The notes below the pieces were generated by a model, which worked only from the letters and a program-made list of their open reading frames with translations, had not been told where the DNA came from and ran no database searches. A stretch of 64,000 nucleotides of DNA from Orbicella franksi (lineage: Eukaryota), in NCBI GenBank assembly GCA_964199315.1, contig OZ116704.1, positions 12,400,001 to 12,464,000 of the forward strand, in the 5' to 3' direction. The position numbers and the translations under genes were made by a program. This document shows positions 19,101-25,100 of the stretch, in pieces. The first letter of the stretch is position 1, and each line of letters begins with the position of its first letter.

Positions 19101-22100
19101 AGGCTGTCATTAAGGGCTGTTATCATTACACCTTTTATGGCTGAGTATGTTTAATGGGCCTTTGATGTTATTGCTATACTTGCCTATACTCTGTAGATGA
19201 ATTCACCCATTGAGTAACTAGTTTGTCACGGGTGTGAAGTTAAGGCTACACATGAATCAAAACTTATTGACAGCCTTGTAAAAGGTACATGTACATCAGT
19301 TTGTTGGATAGTCAATCACTTGGTGTAATGTTGTTACATTTTTAGCTCATATGTGGTTCGATAATGTAACGATTGAAGCTGACACAACCGAAGACCAGTC
19401 AGGAGTGTCGCACAGTAAGGTGAGATGCACTCTGTGTTCTTGGTGGTAAAGTGCTCTAGCTTATGATTTATTCACCAACAGGTCTTGGGTTGTTGTGTGA
19501 CCCCATCCTTTTGTGAAAATACATTGTGTAGAAGATGAATTTCACAAGTTGTAATTATTGTTGGGTGGCTTAGTGGCTAGGGCACTGGAATCGAAATTAG
19601 GAGATCACAGGTTCAAGTCCTGTTCTGACCACTAGCTGGTGCTTTTCTCAGTAGTCTCAAGTTCTCTTCAGTTCTTGGCCAGTCTTTTAAAGAGCCAACT
19701 GGTCTGCATGCCTCCAGCCAGTTGGGATTTTTAACCATGTTATGTTCATTTACATTTTATTTGTTTCATCGTTTGTTTCTGCTGACCCTGAAAAGCCCAA
19801 ATGAAAGAGTGGTAAATTAAGATATTTATTTATTTAAGATCATTCTTGGATTTATGGTAAGTTGTGTTATATTGCTCGACTCCTAGTTATGAAACGCAGA
19901 CTTTCAAAGGTCACGGTGAGCATGAGACATGTACATGTAATAAACTAAGAATGGCTCATGAGTTTCTTGGCTGGTTTTCTCAATGTTACTGAGATTTGAT
20001 GGCTGTGGCAACTTAATTTGTCATCTTTTTTTTTGTTGCAGACATCAGATACATGGAAAGCTCTGGCTCGTATTGCTGCGCTGTGCAACAGAGCTGTGTT
20101 TAAAGCAGACCAGGATCATATCCCAATCTTAAAGAGGTACAATTTCATGGAAAAGCCCCTTTCACAGTTCATTACGGAGAGGGGGAGGGGGTGAATAGGG
20201 CTATGCAAATCCGCCAATTAGTGCCTTTTTTGCACCAAATCTGTCGATCTGCCAATATTTTTGTTCAAATCCGAAACCACAATCACATCCAGAAACAGAA
20301 GTATAAAAGTTCAAAAGTAAACTGGTAAATGTGAATGCCATTGTTAATTTCGCACAAATAGTAAAGAAAGCAGCATACTTGATGGCTATAACATAGTGCA
20401 ATTCCCATAACAGTCTCACACCTGAGCTTAAGGTTGAAGAAAGATCTATGATCCAAATTTTGTTTAGGACCCAAGATCTGAACATCAATACAGGCACAAT
20501 CTGGAATCCGTGCCATAATTTACAGCTACAGATCCTCGATCCACTCTGTTTTCAAAATCCGCGAATCCACTCAATTTACTGCAAAAATCCATAATCCGTG
20601 CACTTTTTAAGGCCACATCCATCAATCTGAAACCCTATTCACCCCACTCATTACAAACAGTGAAAATCCAACGTGGATGCGTGCAATTTTGGGCAGTTTC
20701 TGCCAAAATTGCTTCAAATCCAAGTTAGATTGCATTTTAATGACAATTCATAATAATTGTTTTAAGCTAACTGTGAAAAAGGGCTATTGCCATTTACCCT
20801 AGCAAGTTGATTTATTCATGTTCATGTTCGTTCTGTGTGTTCATACATGTATTGTAATCATTGTGCAAAATGAATGCAGAGCTAAATTTTGTGTGTATTA
20901 TTTTGAAACTGCACACTCTTGAGTGGGCCATCAGGTGATTGACAATTAATTTGGTATGTTTGAACAGGGACTGTTCAGGAGATGCATCGGAATCAGCCTT
21001 GATGAAGTACATTGAATTGTCAGAGGGAAGCGTGAAAGAAATTAGAGAAAAACACAATAAGATTGCCGAGATTCCATTTAACTCCACTAACAAGTACCAA
21101 GTCTCAATCCATGAGAATCCTGATCCTGACGACAAGCGCTATATTCTTGTGATGAAGGGTGCCCCTGAAAGAATCCTTGATCGCTGCTCAACCATCCTAT
21201 TCAACGGTGAAGAAAAGGAGCTTGACGAGAAGATGCAGGAAGCTTTTAATACTGCTTACCTTGAGCTGGGAGGCATGGGTGAACGTGTTCTTGGTTTCTG
21301 CCATTTCTTTTTGCCCTTGGAAGAGTTCCCGCCAGGTTTTGAGTTTGTTACAGATGAGGTGAGTACATTCTATCTTGTGCCAAGTTTAAATGTTAAAGTT
21401 TTGCTTGCCACCATGCATATAATGAATTATGTACAAGTGAAAAAGTTCTCAGCAGTTGAAAAGCAAGGAACTTAATCCTGTGAGCTTGTTTATTTACCAA
21501 TAGCGCAGACACCTGGATACTTGGGTCCTCTGCTACTTGTAAGGCAAAGACTAACACAAGAAGAAAGAAATCTTCATGTGCAGTTGCTAAATTCAGACTT
21601 GCATCAACTTTAAAACAGTTATTCATAAGCAAATAAACATAATTTCTGCCTCGTCATGTTGTTGAGTTAGTAATAAGACTCCTAGCAGACCAATTCTTAA
21701 CTGGAAGACTGCTGGCAGTAATTTTGCACCCCTTGTGGAATTTCTTGTTTTTTTGTTGCACTGCTATTGATGTTGTGTTGAATGAAGACACTGATAAATG
21801 CCATACTTAATACCTTCTTTGATGACGAGCAAATTACTGAGTAATGTTACTAATTAAAAATATTCTTAAGATTTCTTTAATGGGGAGCAAAAGGCTACTA
21901 AATATATAAATTGTTCTCACGAGAAGTTTTCTACAGTGGGCAGGTGGAGGTTGGAGAGACCATTTACCATGTACTGAAAGATAAAATGTCTGTTTGTTTA
22001 CAGCCTCCTAATTTCCCACTTGAAAACTTGTGCTTTGTTGGTCTCATGTCCATGATTGATCCTCCTCGTGCTGCTGTTCCTGATGCTGTAAGCAAATGCC

Positions 22101-25100
22101 GTAGTGCAGGAATCAAAGTTATCATGGTCACTGGTGATCATCCAATCACAGCTAAGGCCATTGCTAAAGGAGTTGGAATCATTTCAGAAGGTGAAAAAGA
22201 GTTATGCCTTAAATGATATTTTCTACATTTCCAATGGAGTTGAAAACGTAATTTGCTTGTCAGTGACTATACAATATTATTGTCCACCATAGAAGAGAAA
22301 TACTTACTACATGTAGAAGATATTTTTATCATGTAAGGAATAGTGTCTTGAGATTATGATCTGAAGATATCATCGCTTGAGCAGGGATGTAGTTAAGAAA
22401 ACTCTAACCCGCCTCATTAGCGAGCCCAGCCTGCTTTTCTGGCCTTGGCAGCTGCAAAGGTTACTGAATTTTTTGTCTTCATGTAAAATTGCAGCTGAAT
22501 TTTAAGTCCTCTTTCAGCAGGAGAAATAAGTTTGTAGCCTGCCCTAAGTGACTCTCCTACTTGAGGGTTGGTGTTCTAAGGGCTAGTCTTCATCCCAGCT
22601 GTTTTGTAGACTGCACATTGCACAACGTTTGTCTCCACTGGTTACATTCCTGCCCAGAGGTCTAGCCAGTTACAGTTAGATTTCATTTATTGGTCAGTTT
22701 AACAAATTGACACTAGTTTTTCATGAGTCTGTCCTGTTATTGATTATCACGAACAGTCACGTGTGACAATAATTGTTATGTAACATTTAGTCTCAAAGTT
22801 TTGGTTTTGTTTGTACAGATCATACTTGATTTCAACTTGATTTTCCAGGTTTTATATTATGATCAAATTAATTGTATATATGTTACGACATGTGTCATTT
22901 TTGCAGCGGATATGTTTTTCGATAGATCAATAAGCAAATTCACAAATTTACGACTGTAGTTACAAGTTTGTAACATTGATCATGAATTTTGTCATAATAT
23001 TGTCAAAGTAGCTGTTGATCCACGAGGCGATAGCCAAGTGGATCCGTAGACTACATTGACAATGTTATGATGAAATTCATTGTCAGTAACAGGACAGACC
23101 CATCAAAAACTGAGAACAATTTAGTTTTTAGGTTAACAAACTGTCAAATTGTCCACTCTTGCTCGTTAACACATTGCATAAATTATAAATAATGTGTCTG
23201 TCCGCTTATTGAGAATGAAAATGACCAATGAGTGCGGCAGAATTTGTGCAGTTACTGCAAAAAAAATCAGAATTGCAGAATCTGTCAACTGTACCAATTT
23301 AAGCTTTTGTCATTGGTTAAAGGTCAGTGAACCTACAGCAACACCAGAAATTGGCACATCGTTTTTCACAGGAAAAAGAAATACAATGATTCTACAGTAT
23401 ATAACTCAAAACATCAACATGTATTACAGTCAGGACACTTGAACCGTGAACATTTGACATTTTTTGTACATTTTTTTAGTGACTATAGTATGAGGGTTCT
23501 TCATACTAACAAGATTATTCAATGTTTTTACACTGTAAAAATGCAGATCCTGTACATTTGTAAGAAGAGCCTTCGTTCTTTCATCTCTGAAAAAAGTGCG
23601 AAAAAATGACAGGTGTTCATGGCTCAAGGGTCCTTATTGTAAGCTGTTGGACATGACTATCAAGTGTGCATAAACATTGGAAGGCAATTACTGAATGTGG
23701 AAAATAGATTTAAAATGATTGCACTATTATTTCAGGAACTGAGACAGTAGAGGACATAGCCACTCGTCTTAACATTCCAGTTGAGGAGGTCAACCCAAGA
23801 CAGGCGAAGGCCATCATTGTTCATGGACAACAGCTGAAGGTTAGTGAAAAATTTACAGCACACAAACCTTGCTTAAAATATGAGATAGATTGGCTGTAAA
23901 GGAAGGAGATGAGGAGCTGGAACAGAAGATTTGGGGGAGGTCTGCCACGTTGCTGTCCACTGGATTGAGTGGCGAAGAATTGCTGAAGACCTTTGTGCCA
24001 CCCAGGCACTGATAGGATAGATGACAAAAGCTTAAGTAAGCTGAGGTCTCTTTCAGAGGTGTCATCATCGTCACTTCTCGTCATCATTATCATCATCATT
24101 ATCATTATTATTATCATCCTCATCATCATCATCATCGTCATCTATCCTTAACACTGCACTAGGGGTTGCATGGGACAGTGCACCTTTAGATTAAGGGTTT
24201 TTAAGGTCTTGCAAAATTTCAGCCAGTGATAAGCTCTCTCCCTGGAGAAATAAACCAGCGACATCCCTGCTATTGTCATAAGGTCCATTGTTTTTCTCCT
24301 GCTCAAGTGATTGTGAGGTTTGACTGGAACAATTCCATTAAGATAGAGTGGCTTGGAAGTGATATGTTTAGTTGAGCAACCTTTGAATTTGTGGTTATTA
24401 TAGGATATGACTAGAGAAGACATTGATGACATTCTGGCCCACCACACAGAGATTGTATTTGCCAGAACTTCTCCACAGCAGAAGTTGATCATTGTAGAAG
24501 GCTGTCAGCGACAGGGTGCCATTGTTGCTGTGACTGGAGATGGTGTCAACGATTCTCCAGCCTTGAAGAGAGCAGATATTGGTGTGTAAACTGATCAACT
24601 TTAGCATGAAACTCTCACTTTCGATTTAAACTGGGATTATCATTCTCATGTCCTGTGTTTCTTTGCCAGGTGTTGCAATGGGCATTGCTGGCTCGGACGT
24701 ATCCAAACAGGCAGCAGACATGATCTTGTTGGATGACAACTTTGCTTCCATCGTCACTGGAGTTGAAGAAGGTGTGTATGTATCTTAACCTAATAATTGT
24801 TACATGAATGTAGTTTTGATTTCCAAGTTGAGGTTTCGTTTTTTGGGGATGTAGTTTTGAAAGATTGTGCCTTTGTAATCTGTTAATGGTATGCAGTCTT
24901 AGGTTTGTTTTAGTTCACTACCAAGTCTGTCTATGATGAAGTGTCATGGATTTTCTCATCTGAAAGGTGATGAGAACACCATGCTGCCTTCCTTCTGACT
25001 CAACAGACAGGATTTATTATCATGCAAAAGTTGTTTGTTAATATTTGTTCGAGTCAAATTTCTTTTACGGTCAATTGCTTAGAGCCTCAGTCTGTCAGAC

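What the first reader, a model, noticed from the sequence alone, without database searches (positions are those of the whole stretch)
22004..22164. Zero-difference tracts between otherwise diverged paralogs suggest gene conversion
Seen: A 22004-22077 equals B 44156-44083 over 74 nt, and A 22109-22164 equals B 44051-43996 over 56 nt, including all third positions, with a cluster of synonymous changes between them. The GVAMG exon differs at only 5 of 102 nt, while M1-M4 and M5-M8 exons differ heavily. Known: in Leptodactylus frogs, gene conversion homogenises the ATP1A1 S and R copies while selection keeps the resistance sites distinct. Inferred: a convergent regime here, possibly helped by the inverted orientation.
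Basis: partly seen in the sequence, partly recalled or inferred. Interest (0 to 1): 0.75.

Follow-up and report, generated by a model that had tools for sequence, protein, structure and literature searches.

The report
Gene conversion between coral sodium-pump genes
Two very old, tail-to-tail sodium-pump genes of a stony coral keep three short stretches of coding sequence nearly identical by repeatedly copying them from one gene to the other; this is gene conversion, a known process, and it recurs here in at least six coral-like genomes.

Summary
Exon 12 of paralog A (22004-22190, +) and of paralog B (44156-43970, -) share exact runs of 74 and 56 nt. Seven synonymous changes lie between the runs. 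The rest of the two Na,K-ATPase alpha genes is saturated at silent sites (pS 0.66).

I rebuilt both gene models and fetched both genes from five other coral-like assemblies, plus two single A genes. In every genome the pair lies tail-to-tail.

In exon 12 (nt 1-161), exon 14 (nt 41-178) and exon 15, the two paralogs of one genome are closer to each other than to their orthologs. A tree of these 401 nt groups by species, and A-monophyly is rejected (p-AU 5e-64). All other exons split cleanly into A and B (100/99).

Tracts reach into introns: about 65 nt after exon 15 in the window, and a 496-nt tract spanning intron 14 in another genome. This is therefore DNA-level interlocus gene conversion, not synonymous-site constraint and not mis-assembly.

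The duplication predates the sea-anemone/stony-coral split. The comparison with Leptodactylus holds only loosely: here about 14% of the CDS is homogenised, and selection against conversion is not shown.

This is a new case of a known process. Earlier notes of this scan cover the same two genes (toxin-pocket residues, the intronic snoRNA), not the conversion.

The parts
12305..29964 (+). Paralog A, Na,K-ATPase alpha gene. It is modelled from the second coding exon (12305-12466) through e3-e23 to the stop codon. All splice sites are AG/GT. The first coding exon was not located.
   Evidence: The reading frame is intact over 983 aa and carries the motifs [19 protein letters not shown] and [12 protein letters not shown].
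34818..55867 (-). Paralog B, Na,K-ATPase alpha gene, e3 (55867) to the stop codon (34818). It lies tail-to-tail with A. The N-terminal exons were not found in the window. It has one extra intron that splits e6.
   Evidence: The protein is 100% identical over 837 aligned columns to Orbicella faveolata XP_020602016.1.
22004..22077 (+). Zero-difference tract 1 of exon 12 in A (74 nt). It equals B 44156-44083.
22078..22108 (+). Central patch of exon 12 with 7 synonymous A/B differences. Three of them are private to window A when compared with the close relative sp7_A.
22109..22164 (+). Zero-difference tract 2 of exon 12 in A (56 nt). It equals B 44051-43996.
22165..22190 (+). The 3' end of exon 12. 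It stays paralog-specific in every species, and the B-type letters (including K to R) are shared by all B orthologs. It is not converted.
43970..44156 (-). Exon 12 of B, the partner of A 22004-22190.
24444..24581 (+). Converted part of exon 14 in A (exon nt 41-178). Its partner is B 42093-41956. The first 40 nt of the exon (24404-24443) remain paralog-specific.
   Evidence: B-type letters appear at 24478, 24485, 24496 and 24511 in independent runs.
41956..42093 (-). Converted part of exon 14 in B.
24670..24836 (+). Exon 15 of A (24670-24771) plus about 65 nt of intron 15. The intron stretch is also alike in B (41776-41675 plus 41674 to about 41614).
   Evidence: The intron-flank alignment score is 40 between A and B, 28-29 to sp7_A, and at most 18 to every other genome.
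41614..41776 (-). Exon 15 of B plus the converted start of intron 15.

Best explanation
The window holds two Na,K-ATPase alpha-subunit genes, A on the + strand and B on the - strand. Their 3' ends face each other 4.9 kb apart. They come from a duplication older than the split between sea anemones and stony corals.

Most of the two genes has diverged to saturation at silent sites. Three short stretches have not. They encode the core of the phosphorylation domain: exon 12 nt 1-161, exon 14 nt 41-178 and exon 15. These stretches are kept alike by recurrent non-allelic (interlocus) gene conversion.

The likely mechanism is as follows. A break in one copy is repaired using the paralogous exon as template, which copies tens to a few hundred bases and sometimes the adjoining intron. 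Each event restores the near-perfect identity that the next event needs, so these 'conversion islands' sustain themselves. Exons that fell below the identity needed for pairing have escaped for good.

In the window's lineage the core was last homogenised at about the time of the split from the nearest sampled relative (sp7). The two zero-difference tracts of exon 12 are younger still.

Shown here: the phylogenetic mosaic, its recurrence in six genomes, and the extension into introns. Inferred: the break-repair mechanism, the identity threshold and self-perpetuation, and any help from the inverted arrangement.
For: 1. Within-genome A-B distance is lower than both the cross-species A-B distance and the ortholog distance in e12, e14 and e15 in all five species pairs. 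For e12 it is 0.04-0.10 against 0.14 and 0.12-0.13. For e15 it is 0-0.06 against 0.12. In e7, e11, e13 and e19, within-genome distance equals cross-species distance and exceeds ortholog distance.

2. The rest-of-gene tree splits A from B at 100/99. The 401-nt core tree groups by genome: sp6 100/100, sp5 99/97, sp3 94/96, sp1 93/92, sp4 81/87, and (win_B,(win_A,sp7_A)) 97/94. A-monophyly is rejected (delta lnL 243.7, p-AU 5e-64).

3. The core has 0 fixed A-versus-B sites and 41 species-private states shared by both paralogs among 115 variable sites. The rest has 12 fixed sites and 15 shared states among 357 variable sites.

4. Introns are affected. About 65 nt after e15 are alike in window A and B, and this stretch is shared only with sp7_A. 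In sp6 a 496-nt tract at 95-96% identity spans e14, intron 14, e15 and part of intron 15. In sp4 a 359-nt alignment at 85% identity spans e14, intron 14 and e15.

5. The tracts are not invariant across species. Window A or B differs from sp3_A and sp3_B at 7 of 74 nt in tract 1 and 3-4 of 56 nt in tract 2.

6. The tests for runs and clustering in the window pair are significant.

7. The tail-to-tail pair lies on one contig in all six genomes.

8. Independent read sets agree with the assembly.
Against: - No conversion event was observed directly; everything is inferred from divergence patterns.
- For the window species alone the phylogenetic signal is modest. Only two private states are shared by A and B. 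The pair is not a clade in the best tree, though this is not rejected (p-AU 0.25), because sp7_A sits with window A.
- The B copy of sp7 was not available, so the age of the two zero-difference tracts rests on counts of differences.
- The boundaries of the 401-nt core were drawn after looking at the alignment. The whole-exon set e12+e14+e15 gives the same answer, with A-monophyly in 0% of bootstrap trees.
- There is no GC3 excess in the converted exons, so no sign of GC-biased conversion.
- In the window, identity in exon 12 starts exactly at the exon edge, and similarity in the upstream intron is only marginal.
Confidence: 0.9

Rival explanations
1. There is no exchange. The tracts are identical because silent sites in these exons are under strong constraint in both copies, for example from RNA structure, splicing enhancers or codon choice.
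For: These exons encode the most conserved protein segments (98-100% aa identity). They also evolve somewhat more slowly between orthologs than other exons do (0.12-0.19 against 0.16-0.33).
Against: - Orthologs differ more than the paralogs of one genome do.
- There are 41 species-private silent states shared by both paralogs.
- Many positions inside the tracts vary among species.
- Non-coding intron sequence is homogenised too, and in a lineage-specific way.
Confidence: 0.03
2. The identity is a local mis-assembly or polishing artefact that copied one paralog's letters onto the other.
For: Short exact repeats between paralogs are places where short-read polishing can homogenise sequence. Unitigs of two runs break at 22001-22030, where the shared tract starts.
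Against: - The same pattern occurs in six independent assemblies.
- A contig of run X3 spans 21300-22293 across exon 12 with A's own introns and shows no difference within the exon.
- No alternative letters are reported inside 22004-22190 in three DNA runs, although B-type letters are reported in exon 14.
- A unitig break at an exact repeat of 31 nt or more is what a true shared tract predicts.
Confidence: 0.02
3. Exon 12 was homogenised through an RNA or cDNA intermediate, not by DNA-to-DNA conversion. This would explain why identity starts exactly at the exon's first base.
For: In the window, tract 1 begins at the first base of the exon. Paralog A has lost the intron inside e6, a change often ascribed to reverse-transcribed templates.
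Against: - The e15 tract runs about 65 nt into intron 15.
- In sp6 and sp4, intron 14 is included in the tract.
- Adjacent e13 is never converted, although a cDNA template would join e12, e13 and e14.
- There is weak above-background similarity in the 25 nt upstream of e12 (score 15 against a shuffle maximum of 10).
Confidence: 0.05

Closest known systems
Non-allelic gene conversion between the ATP1A1 S and R paralogs of Leptodactylus frogs (Mohammadi et al., bioRxiv 10.1101/2020.08.04.234435)
   Same: It involves the same protein family. The paralogs are linked. Paralogs of one species are closer to each other than to their orthologs in the converted parts. Paralog-specific residues persist at the M1-M2 loop.
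   Different: - In the frogs the duplication is young, the copies lie in tandem in the same orientation, and nearly the whole gene is homogenised, with 12 residues held apart by measured selection.
- Here the duplication predates the anemone/coral split and the copies are inverted. Only about 14% of the CDS converts, and the diverged loops lie in exons that show no conversion.
- No toxin or resistance phenotype is known here.
Long-lasting, segment-limited concerted evolution of old gene pairs, for example mammalian pairs converting for over 100 million years (PMC2720389, listed)
   Same: Stretches of homogeneity sit inside otherwise diverged old paralogs, and the pattern recurs in several lineages.
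   Different: This is a different gene family and phylum. The islands here are single exons or parts of exons (100-160 nt), and their boundaries are the same across distant lineages.
Gene conversion with persisting islands in GOT1 paralogs of the copepod Tigriopus (PMC3728101, listed)
   Same: It is an invertebrate paralog pair with a mosaic of converted and unconverted segments.
   Different: There the emphasis is on islands of divergence within converted genes. Here it is islands of conversion within diverged genes. I read only that paper's abstract.

Membership tests
Interlocus (non-allelic) gene conversion / partial concerted evolution | In the affected segment, the paralogs of one genome are more alike than orthologs between species | tested here: met
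   for e12, e14 and e15 in six genomes.
Interlocus (non-allelic) gene conversion / partial concerted evolution | Different segments of the same gene pair give conflicting trees (a mosaic) | tested here: met
   The rest of the gene splits A from B at 100/99. In the core, A-monophyly is rejected (p-AU 5e-64).
Interlocus (non-allelic) gene conversion / partial concerted evolution | Silent sites and non-coding flanks are homogenised, not only amino acids | tested here: met
   All core differences and shared states are silent. The intron-15 flank is homogenised in the window, as are intron 14 and part of intron 15 in sp6.
Interlocus (non-allelic) gene conversion / partial concerted evolution | Runs of identity are longer than chance allows (a GENECONV-type test) | tested here: met
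   My own permutation of 744 conserved degenerate codons gives p of about 1e-4. GENECONV itself was not run.
Interlocus (non-allelic) gene conversion / partial concerted evolution | Direct observation of an exchange, such as shared polymorphism between the copies or an event in a pedigree | not testable with these tools
   This needs population resequencing with paralog-resolved reads.
Na,K-ATPase alpha subunit (P-type ATPase, type IIC) | P-type ATPase motifs and domain set (DKTGT phosphorylation site, [17 protein letters not shown] hinge, Cation_ATPase_N, E1-E2_ATPase, Cation_ATPase, Hydrolase, Cation_ATPase_C) | tested here: met
   The motifs are read directly in both models. The Pfam domain set is precomputed for the full-length relatives and for exon ORFs of the orthologs. 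B equals a RefSeq protein named sodium/potassium-transporting ATPase subunit alpha-like.
Leptodactylus-type regime (conversion across the gene, opposed by selection at toxin-resistance sites) | Most of the coding sequence is homogenised between the paralogs | tested here: not met
   Whole-gene pS is 0.66. Only 401 of 2952 modelled nt are homogenised.
Leptodactylus-type regime (conversion across the gene, opposed by selection at toxin-resistance sites) | Paralog-specific residues persist inside converted tracts because selection removes converted alleles | tested here: inconclusive
   The converted cores show no fixed A-versus-B site. Their edges coincide with the first paralog-specific residues. 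This fits either selection or a simple loss of homology.
Leptodactylus-type regime (conversion across the gene, opposed by selection at toxin-resistance sites) | One copy is functionally toxin-resistant and the other is sensitive | not testable with these tools
   Only sequence is available. A has L111/N122 and B has K111/D122, and both states are conserved in the orthologs. No assay exists.

The most novel reading that the evidence does not exclude
The three P-domain 'conversion islands' may never have escaped concerted evolution since the duplication in the hexacoral ancestor. The evidence is that identical island boundaries are seen in stony corals and in the deep-branching sp6 lineage. If so, this would be one of the longest-lasting cases of partial concerted evolution known for a pair of animal protein-coding genes. 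It would be held in place by a conserved tail-to-tail arrangement and by protein-level constraint that keeps the exons similar enough to pair.
Probability: 0.45. Interest if true: 0.6.

Novelty: new member of a known kind. Interest (0 to 1): 0.5.

Why it matters
- It shows that a gene pair hundreds of millions of years old can still exchange sequence in exon-sized patches. Exon-by-exon trees of this much-used marker family can therefore mislead: in these exons paralogs look young and species-specific.
- Six or more lineages show the same island boundaries. This offers a natural test of how much identity and what tract length ectopic repair needs in cnidarians. It also lets one ask whether protein constraint alone can keep conversion going indefinitely.
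- For work on the coral sodium pumps, including the 'resistant-type' pocket of copy B noted elsewhere in this scan, it marks which parts of the two genes evolve independently and which do not.

Tried and rejected
- **Representative search.** Searching with one exon gave mostly fragments. It served only to find a long reference protein.
- **Full-length search with the Orbicella protein.** It was swamped by animal pumps at about 80% identity and named few corals.
- **GC3.** It is not raised in the converted exons, so I dropped the idea of a GC-biased-conversion signature.
- **MAFFT alignment of intron 15.** It suggested about 250 nt of A/B similarity. A genome search and Rfam showed that the best-conserved part is a box C/D snoRNA, so I do not count that stretch as evidence for conversion. 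Only the 65 nt next to e15 are counted.
- **Raw poly-A RNA reads of a congener (X22).** No reads fell on the exons. Only 12% of the run was read, and reads resembling human genes are filtered out, so nothing follows about expression.
- **B's N-terminal exons.** They were not found by tblastn.
- **All 12 contig look-ups were used.** The B gene of sp7, the B gene of sp2 and any Nematostella or Acropora DNA could therefore not be fetched.
- **The assembly gap at 31088-31215** between the genes was left alone.
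Full report
**What is in the window.**

A self-comparison and six-frame reading show two complete invertebrate-type Na,K-ATPase alpha-subunit genes. Paralog A runs on the + strand from 12305 to its stop at 29964. Paralog B runs on the - strand from at least 55867 to its stop at 34818. The two lie tail-to-tail, 4.9 kb apart, and that spacer contains an assembly gap which I left alone.

I modelled exons e3-e23 of both genes. All junctions are AG/GT. Exon lengths are equal except for a one-codon indel in e10. 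B has one extra intron inside e6.

Exon DNA and protein searches of the whole assembly find only these two copies.

B's protein is 100% identical over 837 aligned columns to Orbicella faveolata XP_020602016.1. The window is therefore from that coral or a very near relative. Earlier notes of this scan had already called the genome a stony coral.

**The observation.**

Exon 12 is A 22004-22190 and B 44156-43970. The runs of 74 and 56 identical nucleotides are exactly as reported. Seven silent differences lie between them. The last 26 nt carry seven more.

Over the whole gene the Nei-Gojobori silent difference is 0.66, which is saturated. It is 0.29 in e12, 0.22 in e15 and 0.40 in e14.

Of 744 conserved degenerate codons, 47% differ. 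Even so, the six longest runs of identical codons all lie in e12, e15 and e14 (permutation p of about 1e-4 for the longest). The seven central differences are clustered (p = 1.7e-4). Zero differences in 130 nt contrasts with 23 in 271 nt in the rest of the converted core (p = 1.2e-4).

**Orthologs.**

I searched the protein collection with exon 11, which distinguishes A from B (74% aa identity). Clear A-type and B-type exon ORFs came back from other corals.

I then fetched the DNA. This gave both genes from five other assemblies (sp1, sp3, sp4, sp5, and sp6 with two haplotigs) and the A gene alone from sp2 and from a close relative, sp7.

In every pair the two genes lie on one contig in the same tail-to-tail arrangement. 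Exon boundaries are conserved almost throughout.

**The test.**

Per-exon distances show one pattern in all five species pairs compared there. In e12, e14 and e15 the two paralogs of one genome are closer to each other than to the other paralog in other species, and closer than orthologs are to each other. In e7, e9-e11, e13 and e17-e22, within-genome and cross-species paralog distances are equal and exceed ortholog distances.

The alignments show that the homogenised parts are e12 nt 1-161, e14 nt 41-178 and all of e15. The 3' end of e12 and the 5' end of e14 keep B-type or A-type letters in every species.

- **Rest of the gene:** the tree splits A from B at 100/99 and gives congruent species trees on each side.
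- **401-nt core:** the tree groups by genome (sp6 100/100, sp5 99/97, sp3 94/96, sp1 93/92, sp4 81/87). Window B joins window A plus sp7_A at 97/94. Forcing the A genes together costs 243.7 log-likelihood units (p-AU 5e-64).
- **Site patterns:** the core has no fixed A-versus-B site and 41 species-private states shared by both paralogs among 115 variable sites. The other exons have 12 fixed sites and 15 shared states among 357 variable sites.

I drew the core boundaries after seeing the alignment. The three whole exons give the same verdict, with A-monophyly in 0% of bootstrap trees.

**DNA-level exchange.**

In the window, only two intron flanks resemble each other above shuffled controls. 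About 65 nt downstream of e15 match strongly, and about 25 nt upstream of e12 match weakly.

The e15 flank of window A and B is shared with sp7_A and with no other genome. It is therefore lineage-specific copying, not deep conservation.

In sp6 a 496-nt stretch at 95-96% identity spans part of e14, all of intron 14, e15 and part of intron 15. A second stretch covers the e16 acceptor region and e16. In sp4 a 359-nt alignment spans e14, intron 14 and e15.

This rules out explanations by codon or RNA constraint. It also argues against a cDNA intermediate as the general mechanism.

**Timing in the window's lineage.**

In the core, window A and B differ at 23 of 401 nt. Window A and sp7_A differ at 19, and window B and sp7_A at 21. 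Every comparison between the window and sp3 gives 33-39 differences, whichever paralogs are compared.

The last full homogenisation therefore falls after the split from sp3 and near the split from sp7.

The two exon-12 tracts have no differences at all, so they look younger. They may reflect two later short events, or one event with patchy repair.

Window B's e15 equals sp7_A except for two sp7-private changes, whereas window A carries five private changes. This fits copying from A into B followed by drift in A. Without the B gene of sp7, however, the direction is not settled.

**Assembly check.**

Twenty public runs from 12 studies hold the A exon-12 region. I laid contigs of three DNA runs from three organism labels on 21300-24850. 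No differences are reported inside exon 12.

One contig (run X3) spans intron 11, exon 12 and intron 12. In the other two runs the unitigs break at 22001-22030, which is what a de Bruijn assembler does where an exact repeat of 31 nt or more begins.

In exon 14 the runs show B's letters at the four positions where A and B differ in 24478-24511, at about equal depth. Both copies as assembled therefore exist in independent data.

The RNA run gave no usable information.

**Age of the pair.**

I built a careful protein tree with named cnidarian proteins. It places one Nematostella paralog in the A clade and another in the B clade (both 100/99). It places the hydrozoan Clytia outside both clades. 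It rejects a single Nematostella clade (p-AU 7e-6).

The duplication therefore predates the sea-anemone/stony-coral split.

sp6 branches below the stony corals in both clades and still shows the same islands. Conversion at these exons is therefore either very old and continuous, or it has restarted repeatedly at the same places.

**Mechanism.**

The pattern itself is shown. The mechanism is my inference from established knowledge of ectopic recombination. Repair of a break by copying from the paralogous exon needs a stretch of near-perfect identity.

The three islands encode segments in which the two proteins have no fixed difference, so only silent sites can drift. Each conversion event resets that drift, and the islands perpetuate themselves.

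The island edges coincide with the first paralog-specific residues. This fits either loss of homology or selection against carrying those residues across. I cannot separate the two.

An inverted arrangement means that a crossover would invert the interval and not delete it. This may make exchange safer, but it was not tested.

**Comparison with what is known.**

In the frogs nearly the whole gene is homogenised, with islands of divergence held by selection. Here the gene is diverged, with islands of conversion.

Full-text searches for gene conversion together with the sodium pump in corals found nothing. Segment-limited, long-lasting concerted evolution is well described in other gene pairs.

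I therefore rate this as a new member of a known kind. It is solidly supported and of moderate interest.

Noticed in passing
window 24928-25000 (+), 26041-26115 (+), 41389-41315 (-): There are three copies of a box C/D snoRNA, with C, D', C' and D boxes and a terminal stem. They lie in intron 15 of A, intron 17 of A and intron 15 of B. They match Rfam snoU83 below threshold (33-36 bits against a gathering score of 50). The element has only these three copies in the genome. It is found in the same introns of A orthologs and in intron 15 of B in sp4 (and partly in sp1).
   Followed up: partly
window 15325-15369 (A) and 54546-54502 (B), end of exon 4: The M1-M2 extracellular loop differs in a paralog-specific, conserved way. 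A orthologs mostly have L at position 111 and N (or Y) at 122. All B orthologs have K at 111 and D at 122, which recalls the charged pair of the ouabain-insensitive rat alpha-1. There is no functional evidence.
   Followed up: partly
window 16597-16782 (A e6) against 50980-50930 plus 50161-50027 (B e6a/e6b): A has lost the intron that splits exon 6 in B. The loss is shared by the A genes of sp1, sp2, sp3, sp4 and sp7. The A gene of sp6 keeps that intron but has fused e17 and e18 instead.
   Followed up: partly
window 22609-23322 (intron 12 of A): This is a very high-copy repeat. Summed contig depth there reaches thousands to over 100,000 in public runs, against about 40 in the flanks.
   Followed up: no
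window 19559-19631 (+) and 38378-38309 (-): There are tRNA-like matches (Rfam tRNA, 34.9 and 27.2 bits) inside intron 9 of A and intron 17 of B, within a stretch that is 76% alike. This is probably a tRNA-derived repeat.
   Followed up: no
window 16128-16407 (A intron 5) and 56292-56012 (just upstream of B e3); also 62156-61926 and 57089-56859: The first pair of places shares a repeat at 92.5% identity. The second pair carries an open reading frame that translates identically (77 aa). Both look like mobile-element copies near B's missing 5' exons.
   Followed up: no
loci L015/L018 and L016/L017 (sp6, ERZ25073755): The same gene pair sits on two contigs of one assembly with nearly identical exon coordinates. 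These are probably two haplotigs. A Frizzled-domain ORF lies just downstream of A, toward B.
   Followed up: no
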